64,000 nt of DNA from the sequence record NC_014636.1; one strand, 5' to 3'. Under the pieces are notes generated by a model. That model was not told where the DNA came from and searched no databases. It was given only the letters and a program-made list of their open reading frames with translations. Below, piece after piece: positions 9,401 through 24,025 of the stretch (the stretch's first letter is position 1; each line of letters starts with the position of its first letter). Both the position numbers and the translations under genes were made by a program.

Positions 9401-10118
9401 TTATCAGGTCAGCACTATTACCGATGATGTATTCGACGCGAAAATGAGTATTTTCAGAACAGGCGATGTTCAGTTCTATAGAAACGTTTCAAACGGTGGA
9501 CAAGATCCTACCGCTGATAATCATTTGGCACGTTGGAGATATAACGAAGATCGTTATGTTCGCAAGACTGGAAACGTCACTGAGACTATTACCGGATTGA
9601 AAACATTCCAGAATGATACAACATTCAGTGCTGGTAACGGCAATGCGTTCAGTATTAAAGTTGGCGGTGCAATTGCATTAACTGGTTTGTATGCTGGAAC
9701 TGATGGTGCTCTTAACATCGGTTCAAACAAAATCGCATTGAACATTAGACCGAATGGGTATACAGACCCAACAAACCAGACACGATTCCATCCTGATGGT
9801 ATTGTTGAGGCATCCAGTCAAGTTAGAACTAAAGCAACCGCACCGGTCGCAGCTAACGATTTAACCCGCAAGGATTACGTCGATAACTTGATTGATGATG
9901 TTACTAAGTCTGCCGATAGTCGTGTAAATAAGAAAGGTGACAACATGACTGGCGAATTGATTATTACATCCCCACAAGCTATTACTGCAAATGGTGATGT
10001 GACAATCAAGGAACTGCTAACAGTTAAGCGTCTGAGAATTGAAGTCGGTAACGGTGAGTTCTTGGAAATTAGACCTAACGCAGTAACCAGATCTGTTGAT
10101 TTTATTTGGATTAGTTAA
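6405..10118 (+). CDS. 34: Long tail fibre proximal subunit gp34
   Basis: 1237 aa; FRATAGLDAAG-like N-terminus; many ATQAE..G....TPK repeats; divergent from rnh as in T4. Confidence 0.93.
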   Translation: MALQPLRATAGLDAAGHRAINFGYPDKTKGGDGVNVDFFTYENTIQPHSPSRTYPKDFAVTYNDRIYISEVEITAPEPFNLNKWKATRVDPSWRVVTSTANLQGNVRQGEYILSQIVGANSVYTMPFDAANNIPAAGDTVVIKDNGFATHDYEIVVNGNGKKINNQATHRITLSGSTTVFIYNGTEWVAQLWAQGDSNRTYVSSTSYIPGENFFRAKVGDHLVRETQYGGGIRIRLPRYANHGDTIVTYDLDRLNPLTKTEFFVYPNSNHKILVGVGETPVDSAKFDSTGWGYFVFDARINQWRVFDADTKARWNMIESNYTAILGEKLAVHAANATDTITVTFPQEASNGDSFIIDTSYMVQGSKITVKIPDAQANDYIVPDENALGTPYVSKYRDIVKDLTKFTTKTETFTIDGRSHQWEFTYFRNALGTGLDVWVLISNTPMPFRVDRNDTSFVGLAAIATQVEVNKNKEQITTGQNRDCEAFVTPETLSNKVATQTNRGIARLATDAESKATSGTTEAWNSVIMTPERVNNRLATETMRGVLTVATQAQANAMSGTGEMWAQTAITPKVLDGRKSTETQTGITYQVIQAGAKQAERGTKGVGVHDFDEHYRYVTPKVLFEKVATETSQGMGFVATQPETDAGTDNHVNGPLLVTAKTLQGRQATTALTGLSRAVTDAEMSSNTPPTGDNIHVTPDAIVKRTANETRWGLAETATQAEVDAGTLHDRWFVTPKTFGVWLNGTRLTVDVSSGLTTAGTIWAGQSFNIVESTETQRGTLRTATQAETNTMINPLDNVMITPKKLNDRKASETLTGIIEIATKAESDAGTDATRAMTPIRVLDSMRTSANHRMNESRYGVGMMCVLANDASANTVWQGDDIQGSTRPVGQYATDNIVVSPRALNTALAHYLPLLGVAESSRSMDTADGTRVKADDWIRRTVAQTITGGMKFTESPVIERASVVRLDMIATGGKQDTAIMFRNSTNKNWWANGVHVIDGAYQVSTITDDVFDAKMSIFRTGDVQFYRNVSNGGQDPTADNHLARWRYNEDRYVRKTGNVTETITGLKTFQNDTTFSAGNGNAFSIKVGGAIALTGLYAGTDGALNIGSNKIALNIRPNGYTDPTNQTRFHPDGIVEASSQVRTKATAPVAANDLTRKDYVDNLIDDVTKSADSRVNKKGDNMTGELIITSPQAITANGDVTIKELLTVKRLRIEVGNGEFLEIRPNAVTRSVDFIWIS

Positions 10119-10128: not shown

Positions 10129-13100
10129 ATGGCTGAATTAGTTATTGCCCGTGTTACAGAACAGGGTATTCAAGCTCGCGATCTGTCAGAAACATTTTCT
10201 GGCGATAACGAGTTAGTTATTAAGGGTCAACAAGGCAACGCAGGAGGTGAATGCGTTGCCACCTTAAACGGAATCAGCCTTAGCCCTTCTCAAACGAAGG
10301 GCTTAAACTGCATTCATTTGACCGAAGATTTTAAAGCAACCGGTATGGCATTTGACTTTTCAATTGCCGCGGATACAGATAGATTTACAAACTGGGTTAA
10401 TAGTTTGTCTACTGGTATTATTCTTCTAATGAGTCACACAGAAAACGTGACTAATGACAAGCTTAATACATATTTCGATCAAATTGGTTCTGTTGGTTGG
10501 AAGTATTATTGGAATCCAGCAAAAGGAACAAATAGAAGTTCTTACGTTGCTATTATTGATTGTCCACTGAAAAAGATCATGACTGAACAATTCATGGGTC
10601 ATGGTAAAACAACTATGCAAGCCCAGCTTTGTATTGTATTTGATACATTCGCTGATATTGGTGTTACCGGTTACGGTGATATGATTGCGTGGGAAGAAAA
10701 CGAAGTAATATCATCCACTGCTGGATATGCAGTTGTTAAAATCATCGATAAGCCATTATCTGAGTTGAATATCAAAGTCGGCGAATATATCGAAATGAAT
10801 GCGGAAGTGTTTCACGAACAAAAAGCAATTACAGATAAAACTGGTTGCGCTCTTATTATGCAGTTCTGGAATGGAAATACATATATTTCTGGTATGCACA
10901 TTAAGCCAACTGCGGTAGATGTTTGGACGCCGGGTTCAAATATGTCTAGGGTTCCGACAAACTGCAATCGAATTGAGTTGTCATTATATCGATATCCTAG
11001 TGTGCCAACAAGCACAGCAGCTATTGGTATGCGCGACGTAATGGTAAAGCTTAGAAAGCCGGAAGTTAATAAGTCTAGATCACATGGAACAGTTGGACAA
11101 TGGGGCTTTATTACTTCTACCGCCAATGAAGGCGATGCGGAAGCGTCTTTCGTTGCTAGTTCTAAGGTAGGCGATCTAGTATCTCAATCATACGAAGAAC
11201 TAGATCAAGAATGGTTGCCACAATTCGATCAAACTGGATATTTCGATATACCAGACTGGATTCCGGGTTCTAAATTCGAAGTTAGTCAAACTATCTCTTA
11301 TGACTATCCAGATATTACCGATACGTGGATGCGTTCTGGTATGGGTGGAACTACCGACGGAACGGAGAATAGAAATCTAAAAGTTGGTATTAGAACAGTT
11401 CATCATGATAGAGGAGAAGGACACTTCTTTAGTTATGGAGGATTTGGATACGATTTTGATGCTAGAATCGAATATGGTAAATCATACACATATAAGATTG
11501 AGGTTGACGGCTCAAATGTTAAGTTCTATCTGGATGGTGTAGAAGTTCAATCTGGAATCGCTACAGCTCCGTTTAAACAAATAACTCATTTTGCAGTCGG
11601 AGCAGATAAGCGAGGAAACGTTTATATGCATAAACTCCGCGGATCTGTCCATGAACTAAACATGATTGACAAAACTCGCCTGAATGGAACAAATGATCGC
11701 TTTTATAATTTCGTTAGACCCGGTCAACTAGATGATAAACGAACAGTTCCTGGCAAATCACGCTATAGCGGCAAAGAATATTTTGCTACCAACATTTCTC
11801 CTGATAATAGTGCAAATGCTCTTTATTGTGGACCTGGATCTAAACTTGTTCCCGGTGGTCTATGTGACGAAAGTAAAGATGTTTTCGTGACGATTTTAGA
11901 CGCCGGCGGAAACACATTGCTTCCTGGATTGGAACTCAATAAACGATATTCTTGCGTTGTTCGTGAGATCGCTAGTCCAAGAGCAGATTGGGTACAAAGC
12001 TCAAGTCAATATTCTATCAGAAATCCACTCGATGTTAATAATGGAGCGTGGATAGCAGAAGCCGACGGTAAAAACGTTAACACAATGAAGTTTAAGATTG
12101 AGTGTGTTATTAGTCCGAAGATTAACGGCAAAGTGACTAACGTTGATTGGATTGATATTAATAAGCAAATCGCTCCATTGAATGGCGTAGATCAATATTC
12201 AGATATTCAGCCTTGGAATGGTCCCGGTGAGTTTCAAATCAAATTCAATTCTCGTTCTGGTAAAGGATATATTCTTGAAGGTAGAACATTAACTGAAACT
12301 ATCAATCAGTTTGGTGGAATTTACATTGCAACAACTGGAATATTAACTGCATACGGAAATTATGTGATTTCTACTGTAAACGGAACTCCATTCACTGCCG
12401 GAATGCAAGTTCTTGCAAATACGGATTACGTTCTTAGTGGATATATCAAGTCGGGTAGTAGAGTTGTTCGGGTTGGTGCAAGATATAATAACACCGAGTT
12501 TTTCGATGGATATATCTGGGACTTCTCACTTGATGGAAAGGGTAAAGATGATCGTTATTACAAAAATTATAACATGAGTCGATATGATGCCTATAACAAC
12601 TATGTCAAGGACGAACTGGCAAAAGCAGATGTAATCGCAAGCAAAACTTACGTTTCAGATCTGAGTTTGTTTAGCACTGCCGTTAGACAAAATGAAAAGT
12701 CGTATAAGTTCAATACCGCAACGACTCCTAGTGGAGGCACTCTGAAATTTAGTGCACCAAAGGGTTCTATTGTTCGAATTGATTTTGACATCGAAGGAGA
12801 AACTCGGATTGAGTTGAGATATTCACCGGCACAAAGTGGTAGTGCTCCATTGATCAAATCTCTTCCTGCTGGAAGATGCAAAGGGTCAGTTGCTTATAAA
12901 ATCACGGACGAAGCTCCTGGCGTCTATATAAGAACGGTTGCACCTAAGCTCAATGAGGTAGTCAAGATTCATAAGCTAAACGTCTCCAGAGTTTACACCG
13001 ACGTTATTATCGAGAATTCTAGTGGAAGTGAATATAAACTAGAAGATCGAGAGACTCCGATCATGAAAACTGTGAATCGAACTAAGTGGATTCCTGATTA

Positions 13101-14046
13101 CAGAACTGGATATCTTCATATTCAAAACGCTTGGAAGCCAGATCCTAAAGATTGGGCAATTCGTGTTAAGTGTAAAGCTGGTGCTCTAAAAGACGATATC
13201 AATCCTATTTTGAGCGGGCCAGTCTATGATACCAGCACGATTTGCGTTGACCAATATCGAAGTGTTAGCTCAGTTCGTGTGTTCTCCTATAATGCGGCCA
13301 AGCAGCTCAATACAGGAATAACAATCGACGCTGGTGCTAAAGTGGGTGACGAGCTTGATATATTTGTGCGTGTTGTTGGTAACACAGTCACGATAACAGT
13401 AAATGGAAAAACTGCTACCGGGGCTTGGAATCCAGATGGTACAGAAAGTATAAATTTGATCGGCGCAAGGGCTGGAGGATATAGATTCAACAATGATATC
13501 ACGCTTGTTGAGTTGATTGACAGTAGCACTAAGTTGTGCAATAGCCGTCGTTATGATCTATCACAATATTCAACCGTTAAACCAGTTGATACTTTCATAG
13601 AAAACGAGTTGGGCGCAATCAAATATATTAGAATTGGTGAGATTGACGCAACAAACAAGATCTATGGATGGGATATAACTAAAGGCGAAGAAAATCAGAT
13701 TGGCAGAATGAAAGACTCACATTATATCGACGGTGTTCAAATGGATCTTTTTACTACTATAAATACAAGTGGTTATAGTGCTTACTTGCACTTTGTTGGC
13801 GATAAAAGACCATATAACGCAATCGATGTTGAGCTGTATCAAATCGACGATAATAATAACGAGCAGTATATCGGAACGTTTACTGCAATTCAGGCAATCA
13901 ACGCAACTGGATATGGAATTCCAGAAAACGCTGTTGTCACTTCTTGGTTCAGTGGATTGAACACTAACAAGAAAGTTATTTTCCGTCCCCGTGGAGCAGG
14001 ATCGCAACTAGCTTTAGCAGATGCGAAACCGTGGGTGGCAATCTAA
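10129..14046 (+). CDS. 35: Long tail fibre hinge gp35, greatly extended with beta-sandwich/LamG-like domains
   Basis: Follows gene 34; ATG at 10129 with GGAGG SD; about 1305 aa versus about 370 for T4 gp35; three repeats ending in ..GA....F.G.I...L.D....R.Y. Confidence 0.75.
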   Translation: MAELVIARVTEQGIQARDLSETFSGDNELVIKGQQGNAGGECVATLNGISLSPSQTKGLNCIHLTEDFKATGMAFDFSIAADTDRFTNWVNSLSTGIILLMSHTENVTNDKLNTYFDQIGSVGWKYYWNPAKGTNRSSYVAIIDCPLKKIMTEQFMGHGKTTMQAQLCIVFDTFADIGVTGYGDMIAWEENEVISSTAGYAVVKIIDKPLSELNIKVGEYIEMNAEVFHEQKAITDKTGCALIMQFWNGNTYISGMHIKPTAVDVWTPGSNMSRVPTNCNRIELSLYRYPSVPTSTAAIGMRDVMVKLRKPEVNKSRSHGTVGQWGFITSTANEGDAEASFVASSKVGDLVSQSYEELDQEWLPQFDQTGYFDIPDWIPGSKFEVSQTISYDYPDITDTWMRSGMGGTTDGTENRNLKVGIRTVHHDRGEGHFFSYGGFGYDFDARIEYGKSYTYKIEVDGSNVKFYLDGVEVQSGIATAPFKQITHFAVGADKRGNVYMHKLRGSVHELNMIDKTRLNGTNDRFYNFVRPGQLDDKRTVPGKSRYSGKEYFATNISPDNSANALYCGPGSKLVPGGLCDESKDVFVTILDAGGNTLLPGLELNKRYSCVVREIASPRADWVQSSSQYSIRNPLDVNNGAWIAEADGKNVNTMKFKIECVISPKINGKVTNVDWIDINKQIAPLNGVDQYSDIQPWNGPGEFQIKFNSRSGKGYILEGRTLTETINQFGGIYIATTGILTAYGNYVISTVNGTPFTAGMQVLANTDYVLSGYIKSGSRVVRVGARYNNTEFFDGYIWDFSLDGKGKDDRYYKNYNMSRYDAYNNYVKDELAKADVIASKTYVSDLSLFSTAVRQNEKSYKFNTATTPSGGTLKFSAPKGSIVRIDFDIEGETRIELRYSPAQSGSAPLIKSLPAGRCKGSVAYKITDEAPGVYIRTVAPKLNEVVKIHKLNVSRVYTDVIIENSSGSEYKLEDRETPIMKTVNRTKWIPDYRTGYLHIQNAWKPDPKDWAIRVKCKAGALKDDINPILSGPVYDTSTICVDQYRSVSSVRVFSYNAAKQLNTGITIDAGAKVGDELDIFVRVVGNTVTITVNGKTATGAWNPDGTESINLIGARAGGYRFNNDITLVELIDSSTKLCNSRRYDLSQYSTVKPVDTFIENELGAIKYIRIGEIDATNKIYGWDITKGEENQIGRMKDSHYIDGVQMDLFTTINTSGYSAYLHFVGDKRPYNAIDVELYQIDDNNNEQYIGTFTAIQAINATGYGIPENAVVTSWFSGLNTNKKVIFRPRGAGSQLALADAKPWVAI

Positions 14047-14089
14047 TCGTACCTACCCGGTACCCTTAACCGTAACAATTACGGTTTTT

Positions 14090-14116
14090 GCCCCAACTTA
14101 GGTTGGGGCTTTTTTT
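14090..14116 (+). terminator. Intrinsic terminator after gene 35
   Basis: GCCCCAAC-TTAG-GTTGGGGC followed by a T7 run. Confidence 0.85.
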
Positions 14117-14126
14117 ATTCCAATCT

Positions 14127-14134
14127 CATAAATA
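14127..14134 (+). promoter_or_regulatory. Putative late promoter (CATAAATA) for distal fibre 1
   Basis: ATAAATA core about 25 nt upstream of ATG 14160, directly after the terminator. Confidence 0.6.
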
Positions 14135-14159
14135 ATGAAAACTAACATGAGGATTAGAA

Positions 14160-17100
14160 ATGGCAGATCTTAAATTAGGGTCTCAGATTGGTGGAAATCT
14201 AATCTGGCATCAAGGAATTCTGGAATTAAATCCTGTTGACGATAAACTATATTATCAAGATCAGGAAATGATGACAACTAGAGGCAATCAAACTCTACTG
14301 GGTGCAATTAAATTCGGTACTCCGAATGATATGTACGATATTGAAAGTATGAGTGATGGGGCAGGCGGAATTAAGCGTTATCTACGTAAGTTTAGATCTG
14401 GTGCTACATCTACTATTTGGCACGAAACTATTACCGATCGTTTATACACAATTTCAACCGGTGTTACTGATACCGCTCCACAATTCACGTTGAATAACGG
14501 TGATAGTGCGACGTTTCAATATCCAGTATTAACTAACAGTCCACAATCTGGATTGGGGAATGCATTAGCAAGAAAAGATTATGTTGACTCTATTGATGCG
14601 AAAAACGTTGCTAAAGCAGGCGACACGATGTCCGGGGATTTACTTTTTAACTCAACAGCAAGAAAAATTCGAGTTAACGAGATTGCTAGTATTACATCTG
14701 GATGGGATGCAGCTGGTAATTCTACCTTTTTCAAATTGGGTGCTTATGATGTATCAAAGGGTGGCGACTTACTCGAAATAAGAGCAGCTGGTGCTGGAGT
14801 TGGAAACAGAACATCTGGATTCGATGTCAGAACAACAAAGAACATTTCAAATACACCGCTTTATGTTGGCGACAACATGGTTTATCATCCGGGAAATAAA
14901 CCTACTCCGGGCGATATCAATGCATACACAAAATCCGAAGTAGATGAAAAACATTGGATTCGAGTAAAAGACGAACGTGCCGCAATGATTGCGCCAAACG
15001 TATTACCAAAGAGTACAATGGCAGCTTATTTCACAAATCAAAGCGACGTTAGTTCTAGCTGGGTTTCTGGATTCACTGTGAATGGCTGGGATAGCACCTA
15101 CGCAGCTTGGTCATTGTTTGCTGGTTCACGTTCAGACGTCGATCAAAATCAGTTATGGTTTAAGCATGGTCGTTCCTCATGGCTTCCTAGCTCAAGAATC
15201 TATCACGAACAAGATAAACCAACAAACGACGAACTAAATCTGGTATCTCGCGCTGGCGATAGCATGACCGGTGTTTTGAACATGAAAGTTACTGATAGTA
15301 TGGGATTTGGAAAGTATTCTATCAGAATGAACAACGGTTCTATTGGTGGATTAAATCAACTGGTATTCGGAGATCCATCCGATACTACATCAGAAGGTAT
15401 TGCTTGGCCGAAGACCGGCAAAAATGATAGCGCGACAACAAACGCAGAATACGATTTGTTGTGGGCACTTGATGGTGATTTAAAGTTCAATAATAAGAGT
15501 ACATACGGCGAGTGGAATAAACCAACAAACGAAGATCTAAATCTTGTTTCCAGATCTGGGGATTGGATGAATGGTAAACTGGAAATTAGAAATGCTGAAT
15601 TTGAAGTAAAACATAATAACGTTAGACGTGTTATTACTCGTCTTGGTGTGCAAAATGATGCCAAACCATTCATGGTGTTGATTTGTCCAAAATACGTAGG
15701 CAAAGCATTACCGAAACGCGGGTTTGTTGGTCGTGTTACTTTCGAACGTGGAGCAACCACTTCAACTCTACAATCACAGTATGTTGACATTTCTGCTGTT
15801 ACTGCATACACGGCAACCGATGCGCAGATTCATTATGCTAGTTACTATGCTAATGTCAAACTTGTTTATCACACTCACACAGACGGTATCGAATATCTGG
15901 CATTGTATCGTAACATTCAAAGTTCTGCTACTGTGTTCATAGACGGATATTTGTATGGTTCCGAAGAAATGATTGTTATTTCGGATGCAACTGGATTAAC
16001 TGTCACTGATGTTTCAACCAGAGAAAGAATCTATAGTTCTGGTAATAAACCAACAAACGAGGATCTAAATCTGGTATCTCGCGCTGGCGACACAATTACC
16101 GGGGATCTTGTGGTTAGTGGAAAAATTACGGTATCTAAAGTATTACTATCTGGCGCACAAGGGACAGAAGAAAACGCATTAACTCGTAAGGATTACGTAG
16201 ATACTAAAGTAGGTACCGCAGTTCAATCGGTAACAGCTACCGGCGCAGTCAAGAGCACTGGCGGTATTAATCCAGTAATCAGCTTGGTAAATGCAACAAC
16301 AACAGAAGATGGCGCAATGTCTGCTGCTGATAAAGCCAAGTTGAATGGACTTCCTGCTGCTGCTGTGAATAAGACTGGCGATTCAATGACTGGTAGTTTG
16401 ACTTTCACAAATGATAGTCAACTTGTCTGGAGTAGAAACACCGATTGGGCTAAGATTGGATTTAAAAACGATTCCGACTCGGATGCTGATAGTTATATGT
16501 GGTTCGAAACTGGAGATAACGGAAACGAATATTTCAAGTTTAGAGTTAAACCTACTGGTTCTACTACATCGGAAGATGTGTTTTTAATAAAAAGAAACGA
16601 AACGAGATCCAACGGTAGATTTTTTGTAGATCCATCAATATCAGGTAGTGATTTAATTACGTTGATTGGGACACCCAATCCAACCGGAACTAATGCTCGT
16701 GGTATAAGTGGATATGAATCAACAGGCACAACTCGTGAATGGGGTGTAGGTGCATATTCAGAAAATGGTGTGATTTTGTATTCCTATTTGGGATTCGGAG
16801 AAACTCCATGGAATAATGGAGTTAAAATATACGCAGATAAAGTAGTTTCTCCAACCTCGTTCAATGCTCCTGATTTTATTCAGACAACACCGCAAAGTAG
16901 TGTAGCTGGTGCGAGTACAAGAAAGGATTATGTTGATACTCAAATTGCGGCAATAGACGCGAAAAATGTTTCTAAAGCTGGCGATACTATGACTGGCGAA
17001 TTGACTATGCCTAAGGTTAAAAGTGCGTTAAACTTGTTGGACAAAGCCAGTATTAGGTTTGCAGATCTGACTAACACTTGGTTCCATATATATTCAGAAG

Positions 17101-18101
17101 GAAATCAGTTTAAGATCAGTCAAGGAACTACTGCACAAACAAACGTATTTGCAATAAACAGCAACGGTGATATGGATATTGCGGGTTCGACTATTTCTAA
17201 GTATTTTAGAACTGATGAACTAGGAGGAACTAATACAGTAGCTCCATTTGCGAGTAAATCCAGTGGTGGTTCTTATGCCGCGATGTATACTAGATATGCT
17301 CCATTCCATACTGATGTTGTGCAAACTGGATCATCTTATGCTCCTAATGCTTCAATCAGATATACACATAACGGCACATACGCTGGTATGTATTCGACTG
17401 GTGTTTTGTGTGAGAGTGCAGGAACTCCTGGTAAATATACTATTCATCACATTAACCAATCTGCTGGTTCATCCAAAGTTTGGAGCTTTGATGGTAGTAC
17501 AGGTAGATTTACTGCTGATGGTCCTATTAGTTGTACCAATATTGATGTAAATGACGTTATTAGCGGAGAAAATTTACATCTTACTGGAAATATTAGACTG
17601 AACAATAGTGCTCCTACTATTACCATGCAAGATACCGATCACATGGGCGCATTCTTGCACACAAATAGTAATAACTTCTATGTGTTGAGATCTCCGACTG
17701 CGAATAACGGAAACTTCGATAGTGGTCCAGGTGGTGTTCATCCAATGACATTAAACTTGTCAACTGGCGATGCACAATTTAGCCGCAACGGTAGCTTTAA
17801 CGATGTTCAGATTAGATCTGATATTAGACTGAAATCTAACTTCGAACCAATCTTGAATGCTGTTGATAAAGTTTGCACATTGAGCGGTAAGACATTTGAT
17901 AAAGTTGGATGCGACAAACGAGAAGCTGGTATTATTGCTCAAGATCTTGAGAAAGTATTGCCAGAAGCGATTGGTAGTTTTAAAAATACTGCTGGTGAAG
18001 AGTATCTGACTGTTTCTAACTCTGGTGTTAATGCACTATTGGTAGAAGCTATCAAAGAACTTAAAGCCGAAATCGAAGAACTTAAATCTAAACTTAACTA
18101 A
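14160..18101 (+). CDS. Distal long tail fibre 1 (gp36-gp37 fusion-like) with C-terminal peptidase S74 intramolecular chaperone
   Basis: N-terminus MADLKLGSQIGGNLIWHQG matches the T4 gp36 start pattern; RKDYVD and AGD.MTG fibre repeats; C-terminal SDIRLK...REAGIIAQDLEKVLPEA plus coiled coil. Confidence 0.85.
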   Translation: MADLKLGSQIGGNLIWHQGILELNPVDDKLYYQDQEMMTTRGNQTLLGAIKFGTPNDMYDIESMSDGAGGIKRYLRKFRSGATSTIWHETITDRLYTISTGVTDTAPQFTLNNGDSATFQYPVLTNSPQSGLGNALARKDYVDSIDAKNVAKAGDTMSGDLLFNSTARKIRVNEIASITSGWDAAGNSTFFKLGAYDVSKGGDLLEIRAAGAGVGNRTSGFDVRTTKNISNTPLYVGDNMVYHPGNKPTPGDINAYTKSEVDEKHWIRVKDERAAMIAPNVLPKSTMAAYFTNQSDVSSSWVSGFTVNGWDSTYAAWSLFAGSRSDVDQNQLWFKHGRSSWLPSSRIYHEQDKPTNDELNLVSRAGDSMTGVLNMKVTDSMGFGKYSIRMNNGSIGGLNQLVFGDPSDTTSEGIAWPKTGKNDSATTNAEYDLLWALDGDLKFNNKSTYGEWNKPTNEDLNLVSRSGDWMNGKLEIRNAEFEVKHNNVRRVITRLGVQNDAKPFMVLICPKYVGKALPKRGFVGRVTFERGATTSTLQSQYVDISAVTAYTATDAQIHYASYYANVKLVYHTHTDGIEYLALYRNIQSSATVFIDGYLYGSEEMIVISDATGLTVTDVSTRERIYSSGNKPTNEDLNLVSRAGDTITGDLVVSGKITVSKVLLSGAQGTEENALTRKDYVDTKVGTAVQSVTATGAVKSTGGINPVISLVNATTTEDGAMSAADKAKLNGLPAAAVNKTGDSMTGSLTFTNDSQLVWSRNTDWAKIGFKNDSDSDADSYMWFETGDNGNEYFKFRVKPTGSTTSEDVFLIKRNETRSNGRFFVDPSISGSDLITLIGTPNPTGTNARGISGYESTGTTREWGVGAYSENGVILYSYLGFGETPWNNGVKIYADKVVSPTSFNAPDFIQTTPQSSVAGASTRKDYVDTQIAAIDAKNVSKAGDTMTGELTMPKVKSALNLLDKASIRFADLTNTWFHIYSEGNQFKISQGTTAQTNVFAINSNGDMDIAGSTISKYFRTDELGGTNTVAPFASKSSGGSYAAMYTRYAPFHTDVVQTGSSYAPNASIRYTHNGTYAGMYSTGVLCESAGTPGKYTIHHINQSAGSSKVWSFDGSTGRFTADGPISCTNIDVNDVISGENLHLTGNIRLNNSAPTITMQDTDHMGAFLHTNSNNFYVLRSPTANNGNFDSGPGGVHPMTLNLSTGDAQFSRNGSFNDVQIRSDIRLKSNFEPILNAVDKVCTLSGKTFDKVGCDKREAGIIAQDLEKVLPEAIGSFKNTAGEEYLTVSNSGVNALLVEAIKELKAEIEELKSKLN

Positions 18102-18134
18102 GGAGGACGGGGAGAAATCCCCGTTTAAATTATG
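18101..18134 (+). promoter_or_regulatory. Hairpin-bridged ribosome-binding site of the gp38-like gene
   Basis: AGGAGG (18101-18106), then ACGGGGA-GAAA-TCCCCGT stem (18107-18124), 7 nt, and ATG 18132; same design as T4 gene 38. Confidence 0.75.
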
Positions 18135-18572
18135 GTAGCATTACCGTTTTGGCTTAGCACGGCCAATACAGAATTAAGAGCCAATGGATGGGCTAGCAAC
18201 ATGAGAACACAAGCGGGTTTGCCTGCTGCTGGATTTATGAGTCAGTTGGTAAATAAAACCGCGATCAGTTTGATTGCTGCACCAAGTAGAACTAGCTCAA
18301 TGCCAGTTTATTTCTCATACGTAGGTGGAAAAGTTATTATGGAAGTTCCAACATATAACTTGAAACAAGAGATTATACTCGGCATGCCATATGTAAATAT
18401 TACATGGACTGGTCCAGTAGAAGCACAGGGATATCATGGTGGATGGCAGAGAATGGATGCTGGAATGATTAAAATGGTGAAAACAGTTCAAGCGACGACA
18501 GAATTTGTTATTACGTTTTCTAGCTCACCAGATGGAACAACATCAAGACATCAGTGGACGTTTAAAAACTAA
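18132..18572 (+). CDS. 38: Short gp38-like fibre-tip adhesin
   Basis: N-terminal FWLSTA..E...GWASNMRTQAGLPAAGFMSQLVNK resembles the Trp-containing gp37-attachment domain of T2-type gp38; position after the S74 fibre. Confidence 0.6.
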   Translation: MVALPFWLSTANTELRANGWASNMRTQAGLPAAGFMSQLVNKTAISLIAAPSRTSSMPVYFSYVGGKVIMEVPTYNLKQEIILGMPYVNITWTGPVEAQGYHGGWQRMDAGMIKMVKTVQATTEFVITFSSSPDGTTSRHQWTFKN

Positions 18573-18593
18573 GGCACCTTCGGGTGCCTTTTT
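18572..18593 (+). terminator. Intrinsic terminator after the gp38-like gene
   Basis: AGGCACC-TTCG-GGTGCCT plus T-run. Confidence 0.85.
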
Positions 18594-18594
18594 G

Positions 18595-18601
18595 CTAAAT
18601 A
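18595..18601 (+). promoter_or_regulatory. Putative late promoter (CTAAATA) for distal fibre 2
   Basis: Immediately after the terminator, 27 nt before ATG 18628, which has a GAGGAG SD. Confidence 0.65.
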
Positions 18602-18627
18602 CTGCTATAAACTGAGAGGAGTCTATA

Positions 18628-21600
18628 ATGGCAGACCTTAAATTAGGATCACAAATCGGAGGTAATCTGATTTGGCACCAGGGCATTCTTGAGCTAAACC
18701 CTCTTGATGATAGCCTGTTTTATAAAGAATTCGATGTGATCACCTCAAAGGGCGGTCAGACAATTAATGGCGGTATTAATCTAAAAGGCGATATCGTTAC
18801 AACTGGAAAAGTTATTGCAGTCGGCAATGATGTGGGTTGGGGACAAGCACCAAACGCAGCATTCAACATGGACAAAGATAACACAGCTGGTGCTCACTGG
18901 CTTATTGCAAGTCGTAAAGCAGATGGAACCCCGCGCTCTGGTATTCAAGTTCTTACAAACGATGTTGGCGAAGTTAGAATTTACACAAACAAAAACGCTA
19001 ACTATGTCGGATTCCGAGATGGCCAAGTTTTTATCCCTGCAACGACGCCATCGGCAGCGTCTCACGCAGCTCGGAAAGATTATGTAGATCGTGAAGTTGA
19101 TAAAGCGATGCAGTTCGCAGAAACAACTACCGATAAACTCACTGCTGATCTGGCTACCGCAAATACCAAGATTGATACCCTTGATGCACAGAATGTAAAG
19201 ATTACTGGCGCTCAATCAATCGCTGGAACAAAGACATTTACCGACCCCGTTGTTTTGGAAGATCAGCCAACTGCTGATACTCATGCAGCAAACAAGAAAT
19301 ACGTCGATACCAAAGTCGGTACTGCGGTCCAAGGCATTGCGACTACTGCACCATTGACTACTACTGGAGGCGTCAATCCAACGCTGGCCATCACGGCTGC
19401 TTCGCGCACTGCTTCCGGTTCTATGAGTGCTCAAGACAAAGTTAAACTAGACGATCTTCCAGCCGACGCTTTGAGCCGTTCTGGTGGTAACATGAAGAAC
19501 GGTGGATATATCAACATCGAAGGTGTTGGTGGATTGCGTTCATTGTATAACAGCAAGACATATTCTATTATGCGAGATCATAATAACGGCAACGTTACTT
19601 TAGGCGCTGCTAGTGGTGATCTGTATTTGGGATATAATACAACTGCCGAAGAATATACAACAAAAAACGTTGTATTGCATCAAGCAATGAAATGGAATGC
19701 GGGTAATGGACGAGTTCTGGTTGATACAGATGGATTTATTCCATGGGCTTCTATCAAAGATAAAGTTGGTCTAGAAGGTAAGACTAAGAATATCAGGGGT
19801 CCAATCAACTTTGACGAATACGAGTCAACCGGTTTTTATAACTTGTATTTGGCACGTGCAACTGGATCAGTTAATCCTCCTCCATTGGATTACGGTACAA
19901 TGTTTGTTATTGGCTCAGATAAAGACGCTAATACCTTCGTGACTCAAATCGCGACAGATAGAACACAAGGCTCCACATACATCAGAACTAGAAATGATGG
20001 TACAATGGCTTGGACACCTTGGGTAAAACAAATCGATGAACGTGGCGGAGATGTTGATAAACTAAAAGTGAATCAAGATCTAGTAGTAGGAAACGGAATC
20101 GAAGTAGCGGCAACATCCGTCGTTCATACTGTAAAAGCATTAGGAAATACAGCGGATGCTAAACCTTCTCTAATTCTTCTTGCGAAGCGTTCTAGTTCTA
20201 CTCCTATTGAGAAAAATGGATTTATAGGAAAAATTATTTTCAATCGCGGTGCTACTACCTCTAATTTGCAAAGTGATTATGCAGAAGTTGCAGTATATAG
20301 CGGATATACCGAACAGTATGCAAGGATCCATTATCTATCCGGCGCAAAAACATCTGGCACAAAACTGGTATATCATACATACAACGGCGTTGAATATATT
20401 GCGCTGTATCGTTCCGCAATTAGTATGGCACATGTTGTAGTTGATGGACTTAGATATGGAGCACATCCGATACTTATTCCAGACGCAACCGGATTGACAG
20501 TTACCGACATTAGTGTCAGAGAAGAGATTCTTAGTCTTCATAATCTACCGACAAATGATGATTTAAATCTAGTGTCTCGCGCTGGTGATGCTATGACAGG
20601 AACACTGACTGCTGCTAAAATCAAAAACTCAATTATGGTGAATGATAAAGGTAGTATTAGTTTCCAAGATGCGGCAGATACAAGATTCCATTTGGCATCA
20701 GAATCAAACTCTCTTACTTTGAGTCACGGCAACGAAGGACAAAACGCTCTTGTTTCTTTCCTTGGTGATGGATCTATTAACGCAACTGGACCAGTTGTAG
20801 CAACTGCATTCAGATCTTCTGGTGATTATGGTTTCGTTCGTTCGACTAATAGCACTCAAGGTATGTTTGTTGGTGCAGACGGTAGAACTATTATCGGTGG
20901 CGGAGCTGGTGCAACAGGAACAATCCATTTGCGTCCTCAAGGCATAGGAACAACAACAGTTGAAACTATTATCGCGAATGATGGTACTATTACACTGGGC
21001 AAACAGGGAACGGCTGCTGGACATCTAGTTAATAAGGCATATGTTGACGCAGTAGACGCGAAGAACGTTGCGAAAGCCGGCGATTCAATGACTGGTGCAT
21101 TAAACAACACCAAAGCGTTTGTCTCGAATGATTATATCATGGTAGACAAGAACTCCAAGAAGTTGGCATTGGAAATTGATTCCGGTACATCTAAGATTCC
21201 TTATATTAGCGTCGATGCTACTTATAGAGCATTAGAATTTTTGCCTAATAGAAGGGTACTGGCAACACATGGATATGAAGTCGGAGGAACTAATTCCACT
21301 TCCGAATATTTCTTTACTCCATTATCTGGAGTATCAACTGATTGGGCAAGAGGATTTACTGCTATTGAGACCGATGGTTCAAGAAAAGCGGCATTTGGAT
21401 TCCACGGAAAGCCAACCGGAGAAATTGATTTCATTTATCTTGGAGTTGGTGCTGCTCCTTGGAATGCCAACGCAGGTATTCAAATCAACGCTAACAATCA
21501 GATGTTGATGAAAGATGGACAATCCGGCGCTGCTACATTCGGCGCGGGCGCGAGTGCTTTGTTTATCAATAATACATCAAACGCTTGGTTCCATATTAAC

Positions 21601-22623
21601 AGACAAACCGGAAAAGGATTTGAAGGACTTGCTATTTCCGATGGCGTTGCTCCCAGTGAAACTAACCCAATCGCTGTATTTGAAGCTAGTAAAATACTAT
21701 TGCGTAGACCAACATATGTGTATGGTAATGGTCAATTCCAGATTAACACAGGCGGTAATCCAGTATTAGAATTTCATGTTCCTGGAAAACACGCTCGTAT
21801 TGTATGGCTTGATAATACAACAGGCGATTTGAACTTTGGTCAGTCGAATGGTTCATTTGGTGAAGCGAAACGATACATGCAAATGCGAGCAGAGGGAACC
21901 GGATTGACTATGTATGGAACTAACTGGGCAGCCGGTGGTTCACACGCATATGCAGATCAATGGGCAAGAGAAGCTCCTATTCAAATTGATTTTGGAGCCG
22001 TGGCTGGTTCGTCTGATTATTATCAAATCGTGAAGGGACGTTCCGTTGTTTCGGGTGTTGGATATACAACTGACGTTGAACTTGGAGTATTGCGTTCTGG
22101 CAACGTTTGGGGTCAAGGTATTATTCGGGTTGGTTCCGGTGAAAGTGGTACTAAAGGAACAATGGGAATTTATACTTTTGATATCAGTGGTAACTTTAGA
22201 TCTCCGGGTGGAGTATACGGAGGAACTGGAGTATATGATTCTGGTGACCGCGTATATTCTGTAAATAACCCGCCGCCGTCAAACACGCACACACACAATA
22301 ATATCAGAGCTACTAGCGCAGTCACGATATTTGATGGGGATGTTGGTGGAGGAAACTTCGCATTAACTCGTCCATGGACAGACTTTGACATGATAATGTT
22401 TGTTGTTGGCTGGGATGATATGGGATTAGTTAGTCCGAAAACATTCACTAGATATGATCTAGAATATCTACAAGCAATTGGTTGGAACTACGATATTTCT
22501 GGTGGTTCGGGTGGATTAGGTTGGGGCGGAAGATTCTCTGCTGATAACCGGACATTCGTTACCGCTTGGGAAAATGGTAGAGTTCGAAAAGTTGTCGGAT
22601 ATAATCTGAGAACCGTTAACTAA
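18628..22623 (+). CDS. Distal long tail fibre 2 (second gp36-gp37 fusion-like), no S74 chaperone
   Basis: First 25 residues identical to fibre 1 (MADLKLGSQIGGNLIWHQGILELNP); gp37-like YADQWAREAP...SDYYQIVKG segment; different C-terminal tip. Confidence 0.85.
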   Translation: MADLKLGSQIGGNLIWHQGILELNPLDDSLFYKEFDVITSKGGQTINGGINLKGDIVTTGKVIAVGNDVGWGQAPNAAFNMDKDNTAGAHWLIASRKADGTPRSGIQVLTNDVGEVRIYTNKNANYVGFRDGQVFIPATTPSAASHAARKDYVDREVDKAMQFAETTTDKLTADLATANTKIDTLDAQNVKITGAQSIAGTKTFTDPVVLEDQPTADTHAANKKYVDTKVGTAVQGIATTAPLTTTGGVNPTLAITAASRTASGSMSAQDKVKLDDLPADALSRSGGNMKNGGYINIEGVGGLRSLYNSKTYSIMRDHNNGNVTLGAASGDLYLGYNTTAEEYTTKNVVLHQAMKWNAGNGRVLVDTDGFIPWASIKDKVGLEGKTKNIRGPINFDEYESTGFYNLYLARATGSVNPPPLDYGTMFVIGSDKDANTFVTQIATDRTQGSTYIRTRNDGTMAWTPWVKQIDERGGDVDKLKVNQDLVVGNGIEVAATSVVHTVKALGNTADAKPSLILLAKRSSSTPIEKNGFIGKIIFNRGATTSNLQSDYAEVAVYSGYTEQYARIHYLSGAKTSGTKLVYHTYNGVEYIALYRSAISMAHVVVDGLRYGAHPILIPDATGLTVTDISVREEILSLHNLPTNDDLNLVSRAGDAMTGTLTAAKIKNSIMVNDKGSISFQDAADTRFHLASESNSLTLSHGNEGQNALVSFLGDGSINATGPVVATAFRSSGDYGFVRSTNSTQGMFVGADGRTIIGGGAGATGTIHLRPQGIGTTTVETIIANDGTITLGKQGTAAGHLVNKAYVDAVDAKNVAKAGDSMTGALNNTKAFVSNDYIMVDKNSKKLALEIDSGTSKIPYISVDATYRALEFLPNRRVLATHGYEVGGTNSTSEYFFTPLSGVSTDWARGFTAIETDGSRKAAFGFHGKPTGEIDFIYLGVGAAPWNANAGIQINANNQMLMKDGQSGAATFGAGASALFINNTSNAWFHINRQTGKGFEGLAISDGVAPSETNPIAVFEASKILLRRPTYVYGNGQFQINTGGNPVLEFHVPGKHARIVWLDNTTGDLNFGQSNGSFGEAKRYMQMRAEGTGLTMYGTNWAAGGSHAYADQWAREAPIQIDFGAVAGSSDYYQIVKGRSVVSGVGYTTDVELGVLRSGNVWGQGIIRVGSGESGTKGTMGIYTFDISGNFRSPGGVYGGTGVYDSGDRVYSVNNPPPSNTHTHNNIRATSAVTIFDGDVGGGNFALTRPWTDFDMIMFVVGWDDMGLVSPKTFTRYDLEYLQAIGWNYDISGGSGGLGWGGRFSADNRTFVTAWENGRVRKVVGYNLRTVN

Positions 22624-22626
22624 ATA
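22620..22626 (+). promoter_or_regulatory. Putative late promoter (CTAAATA) for the lysis cassette
   Basis: Overlaps the fibre 2 stop codon, upstream of 22672. Confidence 0.45.
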
Positions 22627-22632
22627 ATAAAC

Positions 22633-22659
22633 TAAGGGGCTTCGGCCCCTTTTATTTTT
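22633..22659 (+). terminator. Intrinsic terminator after distal fibre 2
   Basis: AAGGGGC-TTCG-GCCCCTT plus T-rich tail. Confidence 0.8.
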
Positions 22660-22671
22660 AAAGGAGATAAA

Positions 22672-23199
22672 ATGAAAGTTATTTTAAGAATGCTACAGCA
22701 TATTGTTTTGCTGCCTATTCACTTATTCATGTGCCTAACGTGCTGGATCTTATCACCAGTGCTTCCTTTGTTTGCGATAAATAAAGAGACGCTACCAAAC
22801 TGGTTGAGCTGGTATCAAACTCCAGACGCTCCACTAGATGGCGATAGCGGTCACGTAGAACGTTGCCAAGGATATCCTCGTTATATTCAACGAGTATTAT
22901 GGCTAATTCGAAATCCGGCATATGGATTTGCTTGGTCTGTTCTTGCATATCAGCCAAAGAGTCCAAAATTTAAATGGCGAGGATCTCTTGGATATACTAA
23001 AGGAGACGAAGCCAAGTTTGGCTGGTATTTCATCACTCAAGAATGCGGACATTTCCAATTCAGTATGAGATATCCGAGTGTATTTGGGAAACAGTTCAGA
23101 TTTAGATTTGGATGGAAAATGATTGGGATTGCTGCTGCTGGGACATGGCGTGAACGGAAGAAATTTGTTTTCACATTGAATCCACTTGACGGAGGCTAA
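22672..23199 (+). CDS. Conserved Trp-rich phage protein with hydrophobic N-terminus, function unknown
   Basis: AAGGAG SD; LPNWLSWYQTPDAPLDGD and WLIRNPAYGF motifs recur in lysis/tail-adjacent phage proteins. Confidence 0.7.
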   Translation: MKVILRMLQHIVLLPIHLFMCLTCWILSPVLPLFAINKETLPNWLSWYQTPDAPLDGDSGHVERCQGYPRYIQRVLWLIRNPAYGFAWSVLAYQPKSPKFKWRGSLGYTKGDEAKFGWYFITQECGHFQFSMRYPSVFGKQFRFRFGWKMIGIAAAGTWRERKKFVFTLNPLDGG

Positions 23200-23697
23200 A
23201 TGCTTGCACAAATGCTAAAGCAAGATGAAGGTTATAAAGAGACTGTATATTGGGACACAGAAGGATATCCCACTATCGGAATCGGACACCTCATCATGCG
23301 TAAAAGAACAAAAGATATGGGAGAGATTAATCGCGAATTAAGTTCCCATGTTGGAAGAAATATTAAAGACGGTAAGATCAGTGCAAACGAAGTATTGGCT
23401 TTGTTTGAACGAGACATGGACGTTGTTAGACGTTCAATCGCGAATTATGCCGCATTGTCCGGTGTATACGACACTTTAGACACGGTGCGCAAGAATGCCA
23501 TTGAGAACATGGTATTTCAAATGGGGGCGCTTGGTGTGTCGAAATTCCCTAGTATGCTAAGAGCACTTCGAAACAAGGATTGGAACGAAGCATATCGCCA
23601 AGCACTCAACAGTGCATGGGCAAAACAAACGCCAAATCGCGCCAATCGCGTGGCCAGCGTTTTGAAGCTCGGCAGCTATGCTCCCTATGGCTTCTAA
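23200..23697 (+). CDS. e: T4-type lysozyme (endolysin)
   Basis: DEGYKETVYWDTEGYPTIGIGH (catalytic E-D-T), NMVFQMG..GVSKF..ML, WAKQTPNRANRV. Confidence 0.95.
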   Translation: MLAQMLKQDEGYKETVYWDTEGYPTIGIGHLIMRKRTKDMGEINRELSSHVGRNIKDGKISANEVLALFERDMDVVRRSIANYAALSGVYDTLDTVRKNAIENMVFQMGALGVSKFPSMLRALRNKDWNEAYRQALNSAWAKQTPNRANRVASVLKLGSYAPYGF

Positions 23698-24025
23698 TCA
23701 GGAATCTCGGATATTCTCGTTGGGAGAGTGGTCAACGCTTCTTAGTGTTATCGTTATTGTTACGGTAGCTGCGGCAGGTGCGATGACTGCGATCTATCGT
23801 TTAGGACAGATAGAATCGGCACAGGAGAAAATGGAAAGTCGAATTGTGTCAATCGAAAATCGAGTAAACGAAATGAATACCGTAGATAGTAATCAAGATA
23901 CCAAGATTGAATATCTACAGAAGCAACAAGAGAAGACAAACGAAATAACGGAAAAGATGAATGATACCCTGAATAACTTGAATGTGAGTATAAACAAGTT
24001 GCAGGTAGCCATTGATCGGAAGTAA
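23678..24025 (+). CDS. Single-TM, coiled-coil membrane protein; candidate holin or inner spanin-like lysis protein
   Basis: One hydrophobic helix (LLSVIVIVTVAAAGAMTAIY) followed by about 70 aa of heptad coiled coil; overlaps the endolysin end; start codon uncertain. Confidence 0.55.
   Translation: MLPMASNQESRIFSLGEWSTLLSVIVIVTVAAAGAMTAIYRLGQIESAQEKMESRIVSIENRVNEMNTVDSNQDTKIEYLQKQQEKTNEITEKMNDTLNNLNVSINKLQVAIDRK

What the first reader, a model, noticed from the sequence alone, without database searches (positions are those of the whole stretch)
14160..22623. Two alternative distal tail fibres, each with its own gp36 docking head
Seen: two ~1,320-aa genes share 25 identical N-terminal residues of the gp36 type, and each has its own terminator/late-promoter unit. 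Their tips are entirely different: fibre 1 has an S74 chaperone plus a gp38-like adhesin, fibre 2 has a chaperone-less tip. Only one gp34 and one gp35 are present. Inference: both compete for the same gp35 hinge, giving virions with mixed or alternative fibres and a two-receptor host range without any invertase. A similar duplication may already be known in some large T4-like phages.
Basis: partly seen in the sequence, partly recalled or inferred. Interest (0 to 1): 0.75.

Follow-up and report, generated by a model that had tools for sequence, protein, structure and literature searches.

The report
Two alternative distal tail fibres
Aeromonas phage phiAS5 carries two different full-length outer tail-fibre genes that start with the same strictly conserved docking peptide, so its particles probably carry two receptor-binding arms, but this gene duplication was already described for its relative Aeh1 in 2011 and its function is still untested.

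Summary
The window is Aeromonas phage phiAS5 (NC_014636, bases 62001-126000). Genes 14160-18101 (fibre A, 1313 aa) and 18628-22623 (fibre B, 1331 aa) share 25 identical N-terminal residues. Both begin with a whole T4 gp36-like module. The genome has one gp34, one gp35 and exactly two such heads.

New here: the heads differ at 16 of about 17 synonymous sites and at no non-synonymous site, which means purifying selection on both copies and not recent gene conversion. The pair is present in all ten Aeh1-like Aeromonas phages in the collection. The tips are exchanged independently between relatives.

Fibre A ends in an S74 intramolecular chaperone. The small ORF after it has only a weak gp38-type N-terminal docking motif and a T4 gene-38-like ribosome-site hairpin; its body is an unrelated beta-sandwich. 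Fibre B ends in a small domain with a weak fold match to the T7 gp17 tip, and no dedicated helper gene follows it.

Sharing one gp35 knee is plausible but unproven. The tandem duplication was reported for Aeh1 and RB43 (Trojet et al. 2011; GenBank AY266307, genes 36-37.1 and 36-37.2). Verdict: real, ordinary for its clade, already known; the function is still open.

The parts
6405..10118 (+). gp34, proximal half-fibre (1237 aa). It is the only copy in the genome.
   Evidence: phrog_972 over the full length. 34% identity to T4 gp34. One place in the phiAS5 record.
10129..14046 (+). Giant gp35 knee protein (1305 aa). Residues 1-365 are gp35-like. Residues 366-1305 are a clade-specific extension with weak ConA-like/Laminin_G hits.
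   Evidence: phrog_1154 E 2e-46 on aa 5-363. T4 gp35 aa 142-372 aligns to aa 138-358. One place in the genome. No second gp35-like domain in the extension. Weak Pfam lectin hits below cut-off.
14070..14134 (+). Two hairpins with T-runs (14070-14089 and 14090-14116), then the late-promoter-like box CATAAATA at 14127-14134, ahead of fibre A.
   Evidence: z -4.25. Compensatory stem changes in Aeh1, avDM12 and Ah1.
14160..18101 (+). Fibre A (ORF0113, 1313 aa). It is a fusion of a gp36-like module (aa 1-161) with a long shaft, a variable tip (about aa 870-1210) and an S74 intramolecular chaperone (aa 1220-1313).
14160..14234 (+). Head of fibre A, 25 codons.
   Evidence: Identical in protein to 18628-18702. 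59/75 nt identical, and only 10/25 third positions identical.
17817..18098 (+). S74 intramolecular chaperone domain of fibre A. The S-D-x-R-x-K motif starts at Ser1220.
   Evidence: Pfam PF13884 E 3.7e-11. Similar to the C-terminus of S16 gp37, PDB 6f45. The motif is kept in all six orthologues.
18101..18134 (+). Split ribosome-binding site of the small ORF: stop codon, GGAGGA, a GNRA-tetraloop hairpin (18109-18122), nine bases, then ATG at 18132.
   Evidence: Conserved in six phages. Folds at -15 kcal/mol. Same layout as the T4 gene 37/38 junction.
18132..18572 (+). Small ORF (146 aa; RefSeq annotates only 18201-18572). It has a weak Gp38_N-like N-terminus and a beta-sandwich body. It is the candidate tip protein of fibre A.
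   Evidence: Relatives sit directly after S74-ended genes in 3 of 3 metagenome contigs.
18573..18612 (+). Terminator hairpin (18573-18590), then the boxes CTAAATA (18595-18601) and TATAAAC (18606-18612), ahead of fibre B.
   Evidence: Stem covariation and conserved boxes in five relatives.
18628..22623 (+). Fibre B (ORF0115, 1331 aa). It has a gp36-like module (aa 1-173), a shaft, a module shared with Aeromonas chromosomal fibres (aa 1025-1192) and a small C-terminal tip domain (about aa 1226-1331).
18628..18702 (+). Head of fibre B, 25 codons.
15600..16133 (+). Internal module of fibre A (aa 481-658) shared with fibre B.
   Evidence: 44% identity over 212 aa, E 4e-43.
20098..20631 (+). Internal module of fibre B (aa 491-668) shared with fibre A.
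22303..22620 (+). C-terminal tip domain of fibre B. It stands where the chromosomal homologues carry an S74 domain.
   Evidence: pLDDT 70-90. Weak fold matches to the T7 gp17 tip and phage K gp144 (E 0.01-0.04, prob 0.9-1.0, rmsd about 3.3 A to the T7 gp17 tip). Absent from Aeh1 fibre B.
22634..22651 (+). Terminator hairpin after fibre B.

Best explanation
phiAS5, like every Aeh1-like Aeromonas phage, encodes two paralogous complete distal half-fibres. Each fuses a gp36-like connector module to a long gp37-like shaft. Each is about as long as T4 gp36 plus gp37, and each is a late gene with its own terminator and promoter box.

Each most likely folds as a homotrimer starting from its own C-terminus. 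Fibre A would use its S74 intramolecular chaperone, which is cut off at Ser1220. The 146-aa product of 18132-18572 would then probably dock on the new end through a gp38-type N-terminal peptide and display a small beta-sandwich. Fibre B ends in a small tip domain that resembles the T7 gp17 tip and has no dedicated helper gene beside it.

Both fibres keep the same 25-residue N-terminus under extreme purifying selection. They therefore most probably plug into the same socket: the gp35-like N-terminal domain of the single knee protein, which sits on the single gp34. Each of the six long fibres of a particle would then carry either arm A or arm B. Particles would be mixtures with two receptor specificities, without any DNA inversion.

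Shown: gene structure, homology, selection, synteny, independent tip exchange. Inferred: binding to gp35, presence of both proteins in virions, homotrimers, mixed particles, and the tip role of the small protein.
For: - Heads: identical 25-aa heads with pS 0.95 and pN 0 in phiAS5, and pN 0 in 5 of 7 phages. In Ahp1_CNU-2021 both heads carry the same three substitutions while still differing at 10 synonymous positions.
- gp36 type: the head is of the gp36 type, and both proteins align to almost all of T4 gp36.
- Copy number: exactly two heads, one gp35 and one gp34 in the genome.
- Length: mature A is 1219 aa and B is 1331 aa, against 1247 aa for T4 gp36 plus gp37.
- Transcription: terminators and promoter boxes before each gene are conserved, with compensatory stem changes.
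- Distribution: the pair is present in all ten Aeh1-like Aeromonas phages in the collection, assigned to at least three genera.
- Independent exchange: phiWae14 versus phiAS5 has fibre B 99.85% identical but fibre A only 64% identical with a different tip.
- Against heterotrimers: the shared modules are not collinear between A and B, for example A 683-735 against B 229-281.
- Small ORF: it is linked to gp38 by its N-terminus, by synteny after S74 domains and by a T4-gene-38-like split ribosome site.
- No inversion: no inverted repeats.
Against: - There is no direct evidence that either protein is in the virion, or that the head touches gp35. No solved structure with detectable similarity exists for gp35 or the head.
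- I found no proteomic or EM study of this clade.
- In PX29 the two heads differ at two residues.
- The 940-aa extension of gp35 has no known role and could provide another docking site.
- The gp38 link of the small ORF is weak (hhalign probability 66%, no Pfam hit, no fold match).
- The T7-gp17-like match of the fibre B tip is above the usual significance line (E about 0.01-0.04) and rests on a 4-sequence alignment.
- The relative expression of A and B is unknown.
Confidence: 0.55

Rival explanations
1. Branched fibres. Both arms sit on every knee at once, because the giant gp35 (1305 aa) offers two sockets or its extension holds the second arm.
For: gp35 is 3.5 times the size of T4 gp35. Its 940-aa extension is conserved at 50-80% across the clade. 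The giant gp35 and the fibre pair co-occur in all Aeh1-like loci examined.
Against: A profile search finds no second gp35-like domain in the extension. Cronobacter phage S13 (RB43-like) also has two headed fibres but a gp35 of only 501 aa. Trojet et al. state that fibre size indicates a single gp37 trimer per fibre.
Confidence: 0.12
2. Only one of the two fibres is built into particles in a given infection. The other is expressed conditionally or at a trace level, or serves as a reservoir of modules for recombination.
For: Trojet et al. 2011 raised this possibility. Separate terminators and promoter boxes would allow unequal expression. In Ah1, fibre B is annotated as two overlapping CDS (one frameshift).
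Against: Both heads and both full reading frames are kept under purifying selection across at least three genera. No regulatory switch such as an invertase or inverted repeats is present. Both promoter boxes are conserved.
Confidence: 0.15
3. One of the two fibres attaches elsewhere on the particle (baseplate, collar or the gp35 extension) through the same peptide motif, and forms a separate set of appendages.
For: Nothing in the sequence fixes the partner of the head. Many large myoviruses carry several fibre sets (general knowledge).
Against: In about 1400 T4-like records the head is the N-terminus of the gp36 connector that follows gp35. Only two places in the genome carry it, and both lie in the long-fibre module.
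Confidence: 0.08
4. Heterotrimers or end-to-end joining. A and B chains mix in one trimer, or one fibre extends the other.
For: Trojet et al. mention a random mixture of subunits as one option. The two share the head and an internal module.
Against: Module order is not collinear, and most of the length is unrelated. Trimerisation of A is driven by its own C-terminal S74 chaperone (role of such domains from established knowledge). Identical heads mean that a C-terminus able to bind one head would also bind its own, and fibre A loses its C-terminus by cleavage. Each protein already has the full length of a distal half-fibre.
Confidence: 0.04

Closest known systems
Tandem gene-37 duplication of Aeromonas phage Aeh1 (Trojet et al. 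2011, PMC3157838; GenBank NC_005260 Aeh1p335/337)
   Same: The locus is orthologous: rnh | 34, giant 35, fibre A, small ORF, fibre B, DUF7338 gene, e | asiA. The 25-aa heads are the same. Fibre A is 57% identical over aa 1-868 and fibre B 73% identical over aa 1-1217.
   Different: The tips differ: the variable region of fibre A, and the last 115 aa or so of fibre B. The paper left the function open and did not report the head selection, the gp38-type N-terminus of the small ORF or the split ribosome site.
RB43-type gp36-37.1 / gp36-37.2 pair (GenBank AY266307; Cronobacter phages S13 and LPCS28, Citrobacter phage Ci1)
   Same: Two tandem fused 36-37 genes, each with a gp36-like N-terminus, sit behind one gp34 and one gp35. 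The fibres end in S74-type C-termini.
   Different: The fibres are shorter (757-851 aa). Their heads are only 27/40 identical to each other. gp35 is 501 aa. A single canonical gp38 (Pfam Gp38_N) follows the second fibre only.
T4 distal half-fibre gp36 + gp37 + gp38
   Same: Same position between rnh/34/35 and asiA. Both phiAS5 fibres carry a gp36-like N-terminal module. The total length is similar. The stop-SD-hairpin-AUG junction before the small downstream gene is the same.
   Different: T4 has one fibre made of two separate proteins. There is no detectable similarity to T4 gp37 or T4 gp38. T4 gp37 has no S74 domain.
Salmonella phage S16 gp37-gp38 tip (PDB 6f45)
   Same: The C-terminus of fibre A is homologous to the chaperone-bearing C-terminus of S16 gp37 (E 3e-5). 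A small protein is encoded directly downstream.
   Different: The small protein here lacks the glycine-rich GP38 domain. It has no sequence or fold match to 6f45.
Alternative fibres by DNA inversion (Mu S/S', P1)
   Same: The outcome is the same: two receptor specificities from one phage. A segment of fibre A (aa 734-811) is closely similar to Mu tail fibre S (5yvq, E 2.6e-27).
   Different: There is no invertase and no inverted repeat. Both genes are complete and separately promoted, so both can be made in one cell.

Membership tests
gp36-type distal connector head (T4 gp36 N-terminus) | N-terminal sequence homologous to the N-terminus of gp36 | tested here: met
   tblastn hits the start of gp36 in 1258-1398 records, T4 included. 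phrog_1425 E 5.6e-13 for fibre A. blastp to T4 gp36: E 3e-9 for A and 3e-11 for B.
gp36-type distal connector head (T4 gp36 N-terminus) | Separate small protein (about 220 aa) joined non-covalently to a separate gp37 | tested here: not met
   Both are single chains of 1313 and 1331 aa. They are fusions, as in RB43 36-37.1/.2.
gp36-type distal connector head (T4 gp36 N-terminus) | Physical binding of the head to gp35 | not testable with these tools
   There is no solved homologue and no complex prediction tool. The only indirect support is pN = 0 and the co-varying heads in Ahp1_CNU-2021.
Tandemly duplicated distal fibre genes of Aeh1/RB43 type (Trojet et al. 2011) | Two tandem full-length distal fibre genes in the 34-35 module, each followed by a small ORF | tested here: met
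   The fibres are orthologous to the Aeh1 pair.
Fibres with a C-terminal S74 intramolecular chaperone | Peptidase_S74 domain at the C-terminus above Pfam's cut-off | tested here: met
   Fibre A: 43.6 bits against a cut-off of 22. Fibre B: no hit.
Fibres with a C-terminal S74 intramolecular chaperone | Ser...Lys cleavage motif (S-D-x-R-x-K) at the start of the domain | tested here: met
   The motif starts at Ser1220 and is kept in six orthologues. What the motif means comes from established knowledge of endosialidase-type chaperones, not from a test here.
Fibres with a C-terminal S74 intramolecular chaperone | Autocleavage and release of the domain | not testable with these tools
   This needs peptide-level analysis of virions.
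gp38 adhesin (T2/T6/S16 type; Pfam GP38 + Gp38_N) | Gp38_N docking domain at the N-terminus | tested here: inconclusive
   There is no direct Pfam hit. blastp to RB43 gp38 aa 3-60 gives E 0.001. Family profile against RB43 gp38: hhalign E 5.5e-5, probability 66%. Family member P0024 joins this N-terminus to a true GP38 domain.
gp38 adhesin (T2/T6/S16 type; Pfam GP38 + Gp38_N) | Glycine-rich GP38 receptor-binding domain | tested here: not met
   No Pfam GP38 hit. The model is a plain beta-sandwich, and its best PDB match has E 0.06 and is not 6f45.
gp38 adhesin (T2/T6/S16 type; Pfam GP38 + Gp38_N) | Gene directly downstream of the distal fibre gene whose tip it serves | tested here: met
   Family members follow S74-ended genes in 3 of 3 contigs. 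The split ribosome site is like that of T4 gene 38.
Invertible alternative-fibre cassettes (Mu Gin, P1 Cin) | Inverted repeats flanking the variable part, and a site-specific invertase | tested here: not met
   No inverted repeat of 20 nt or more in 13900-23300. No recombinase among the ORFs of the module.

The most novel reading that the evidence does not exclude
The knee of these phages is itself a multivalent hub. The giant gp35, with its conserved 940-aa lectin-like extension, would hold both distal arms at once (branched long fibres) or act as a third binding element. Each long fibre would then carry two or three specificities simultaneously, and particles would not be stochastic mixtures.
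Probability: 0.1. Interest if true: 0.7.

Novelty: already known. Interest (0 to 1): 0.33.

Why it matters
Long-tail-fibre tips set the host range of T4-like phages. A phage that makes two complete distal arms for one knee could recognise two receptors without a genetic switch. That would help explain broad host range in Aeromonas phages considered for aquaculture.

The question of what the duplicated gene 37 does has been open since 2011. This analysis narrows it. Both copies are under selection, both heads are held invariant at the protein level, and the tips evolve independently. Simple descriptive data on virion composition and fibre images would therefore settle it.

Tried and rejected
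- **Canonical T4 late promoter TATAAATA:** absent before either gene, and its count in the window is at chance level. It is replaced by a CTAAATA/ATAAATA box.
- **Sigma-70 scan:** no enrichment.
- **Small ORF, direct searches:** Pfam, NCBIfam and PDB sequence searches found nothing. The word-index search found only two relatives.
- **Small ORF, fold search:** nothing significant.
- **PDB sequence search with fibre B and gp35:** nothing.
- **Recent gene conversion as the cause of the identical heads:** rejected, because synonymous sites are saturated.
- **Second gp35-like domain in the gp35 extension:** none. The self-blast printed only the trivial match.
- **DUF7338 gene after fibre B as a dedicated chaperone:** rejected. 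Homologues occur in 596 phage records of many unrelated groups, and the gene is missing from the Ahp1_CNU-2021 locus.
- **Invertible cassette:** rejected.
- **IMG/VR scan for further loci:** returned only the isolates Aeh1, Ah1 and phiAS5.
- **Literature searches:** searches for virion proteomics or fibre studies of this clade found nothing.


Full report
**Identity of the window**

Megablast places 14000-23000 at 100% identity on Aeromonas phage phiAS5 (HM452126 / NC_014636, Straboviridae, genus Chrysonvirus). The window is bases 62001-126000 of that record.

The finding lies in the long-tail-fibre module, which has the T4 order between rnh and asiA (T4 layout):

| Gene | Coordinates | Note |
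|---|---|---|
| gp34 | 6405-10118 | proximal half-fibre |
| gp35 | 10129-14046 | knee protein |
| fibre A | 14160-18101 | 1313 aa |
| small ORF | 18132-18572 | 146 aa |
| fibre B | 18628-22623 | 1331 aa |
| DUF7338 gene | 22672-23199 | membrane protein |
| lysozyme e | 23200-23697 | |

**The observation**

The two large proteins share their first 25 residues exactly.

At the DNA level the two 75-nt stretches are only 59/75 identical, and only 10 of 25 third codon positions agree. A Nei-Gojobori count for codons 2-25 gives 16 synonymous differences on 16.8 synonymous sites (pS 0.95) and no non-synonymous difference on 55 sites. In codons 26-52, pN rises to 0.35. The identity is therefore neither chance nor recent gene conversion. 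It is very strong purifying selection on the peptide in both genes.

The head is of the gp36 type:
- A 45-aa query hits the first codons of the gene between 35 and 37 in 1258-1398 T4-like records. These include T4 at 57.6% identity over 33 aa.
- Fibre A aa 1-161 and fibre B aa 1-173 align to aa 1-186/188 of the 221-aa T4 gp36. Each protein thus starts with nearly a whole gp36 module, not only a short peptide.
- Neither shows similarity to T4 gp37.

The whole phiAS5 genome has two places with the head, one gp35 and one gp34.

**Transcription signals**

Hairpins followed by T-runs precede fibre A (14070-14089 and 14090-14116), precede fibre B (18573-18590) and follow fibre B (22634-22651). In five relatives the stems differ by compensatory changes, which supports real structures.

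The T4 consensus TATAAATA is not present there. A CTAAATA or ATAAATA box lies 25-35 nt before the start codons of gp34, fibre A and fibre B, and it is conserved in relatives. Calling it a late promoter is an inference.

**Fibre A and the small ORF**

- **S74 chaperone.** Fibre A ends in a Peptidase_S74 intramolecular chaperone (Pfam E 3.7e-11). This region is homologous to the C-terminus of Salmonella phage S16 gp37 in PDB 6f45. An S-D-x-R-x-K motif starts at Ser1220 and is kept in six orthologues. If it is cleaved as in known S74 fibres (established knowledge), the mature chain is 1219 aa.
- **Start of the small ORF.** It begins at ATG 18132, not at the annotated 18201. In six phages the junction reads stop codon, GGAGGA, a 5-bp hairpin with a GNRA loop, nine bases, ATG, then the same first codons. 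The T4 gene 37/38 junction has the same layout.
- **Similarity to gp38.**
  - The product has no Pfam, NCBIfam or PDB sequence match.
  - Its first 60 residues or so align to RB43 gp38 (E 0.001).
  - An exhaustive search found 24 relatives that share mainly the first 45 residues or so.
  - One relative, P0024, joins that N-terminus to a genuine Pfam GP38 adhesin domain.
  - The family profile matches the Gp38_N region of RB43 gp38 with hhalign E 5.5e-5 and probability 66%.
- **Synteny.** In three of three metagenome contigs examined, family members sit directly after a gene that ends in an S74 domain.
- **Fold.** The AlphaFold model has a disordered N-terminus and a confident beta-sandwich at aa 45-146. 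It has no significant PDB neighbour and no match to S16 gp38.
- **Conclusion.** The ORF is positionally equivalent to gene 38 and, weakly, related to it by its N-terminal sequence. Its body is not a gp38 adhesin domain.

**Fibre B**

- Residues 1025-1192 are 65% identical to the segment that precedes the S74 domain in Aeromonas chromosomal proteins named 'pyocin knob domain-containing S74 family peptidase'.
- In phiAS5 the S74 domain is replaced by about 140 residues. The last 105 or so fold with pLDDT 70-90.
- That domain gives weak but coherent fold matches to the T7 gp17 tip (rmsd about 3.3 A over 105 columns) and to phage K gp144 / phi812 receptor-binding proteins (overall E 0.01-0.04, probability 0.9-1.0). 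This is a hint and not a proof.
- The next gene (DUF7338, with an N-terminal hydrophobic segment) has homologues in 596 phage records of unrelated groups. It is absent from the Ahp1_CNU-2021 locus. It is therefore not a dedicated helper of this tip.
- A general chaperone encoded elsewhere was not examined.

**Comparative evidence**

- **Where the pair occurs.**
  - It is present in Aeh1, phiWae14, avDM12-TAAL, PX29, Ah1, AsFcp_1/2/4 and Ahp1_CNU-2021.
  - Outside this clade, two heads per genome occur only in RB43-like phages: Cronobacter S13 and LPCS28, and Citrobacter Ci1.
  - That is 20 of about 1400 records.
- **Conservation of the heads.**
  - In five of seven phages the paralogous heads are identical in protein while pS is 0.36-0.95.
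  - In Ahp1_CNU-2021 both heads share the same three substitutions relative to phiAS5 and still differ at 10 synonymous positions. This looks like co-evolution with a common partner.
  - In PX29 the heads differ at two residues.
  - Nucleotide trees of the heads also show old exchanges between the A and B types.
- **Independent exchange of the tips.** phiWae14 is almost identical to phiAS5 in gp34, gp35 and fibre B (99.85%). Its fibre A is only 64% identical over the first 900 aa or so, with a different tip. Aeh1 differs from phiAS5 in the last 115 aa or so of fibre B, and PX29 differs from aa 472 onward.
- **Shared modules are not collinear.** The two fibres share a roughly 200-aa internal module (44% identity) and repeat motifs, but in non-collinear order. 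This argues against mixed trimers.

**gp35**

Only aa 1-365 resemble gp35 (phrog_1154 E 2e-46; T4 gp35 C-terminus aligns to aa 358). The remaining 940 aa are conserved in the clade. They give weak ConA-like hits below cut-off and contain no second gp35-like domain. S13 has two headed fibres with a 501-aa gp35, so the giant size is not needed for the pair.

**What is known**

Trojet et al. 2011 (PMC3157838) state three things:
- RB43 and Aeh1 have duplications of gene 37, and the function is unclear.
- Fibre size indicates one gp37 trimer per fibre.

GenBank AY266307 (RB43) names the genes 36-37.1 and 36-37.2 and notes the gp36-like N-terminus of each. I found no later functional, proteomic or structural work on this clade.

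**Verdict**

The feature itself is already described for the closest relatives. The most likely mechanism (confidence 0.55) is two homotrimeric distal arms that compete for one gp35/gp34 knee and give mixed particles. The rivals are branched knees, use of only one copy, attachment elsewhere, and mixed trimers.

**Broken genes in relatives (counts only)**

- In the Ah1 record, fibre B is annotated as two overlapping CDS: one frameshift.
- In PX29 the gp35 homologue reads as two ORFs and is unannotated in RefSeq: one frameshift.
- Whether these are real or sequencing errors cannot be told.

Early in my private reasoning I twice wrote out, from memory, letters that I took to be T4 gp36 and gp37. 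None of those letters entered any tool call, script, comparison or conclusion. All T4 comparisons use record OL964735.1, which a tool returned.

Noticed in passing
window 18101-18134; T4 locus L014 9753-9787: The small ORF after fibre A starts at ATG 18132, which is 69 nt upstream of the RefSeq start. It is served by a split ribosome site: stop codon, GGAGGA, a GNRA hairpin, nine bases, then ATG. The site is conserved in six phages and has the same layout as the T4 gene 37/38 junction.
   Followed up: yes
window 11224-14046 (gp35 aa 366-1305): gp35 carries a 940-aa C-terminal extension that T4 (372 aa) and S13 (501 aa) lack. It is conserved at 50-80% in the clade, gives only weak ConA-like/Laminin_G hits and has no internal gp35 repeat. 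Its role at the knee is unknown.
   Followed up: partly
window 22672-23199: A DUF7338 protein with an N-terminal hydrophobic segment sits where T4 has holin t, between the fibre genes and asiA and next to lysozyme e. Homologues occur in 596 phage records of many groups. A published comparison says no holin was recognised in the Aeh1 cluster (PMC6669705). It could be a lysis protein.
   Followed up: partly
L003 (phiWae14) 9163-17899 versus window 14160-22623: Two nearly identical genomes differ almost only in fibre A. Fibre B is 99.85% identical, and fibre A is 64% identical with a different tip. This is a natural single-fibre swap.
   Followed up: yes
window 15218-15271, 15521-15574, 16049-16102, 20547-20600: A 54-nt motif, which encodes the KPTN-DLNLVSRAGD-type fibre repeat, occurs three times in fibre A and once in fibre B at 76-89% identity. 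It is a likely site for module shuffling.
   Followed up: partly
window 16359-16592 (fibre A aa 734-811) and 21700-22203 (fibre B aa 1025-1192): Both fibres hold segments shared with other elements. Fibre A holds a stretch closely similar to phage Mu tail fibre S (5yvq, E 2.6e-27). Fibre B holds a module 65% identical to Aeromonas chromosomal S74-type fibre proteins from prophages or tailocins.
   Followed up: partly
L005 (PX29) and L006 (Ah1): Three oddities in the relatives' records. PX29 fibre B is annotated 36 codons short of its headed start, and it is followed by a Tfa-like assembly gene that is absent in phiAS5. PX29 gp35 reads as two ORFs (one frameshift). Ah1 fibre B is annotated as two CDS (one frameshift).
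   Followed up: partly
window 23678-24025: A 115-aa ORF after lysozyme e has a hydrophobic segment and a coiled-coil-like tail. It has no family match above noise. It may be another lysis-cassette member.
   Followed up: no
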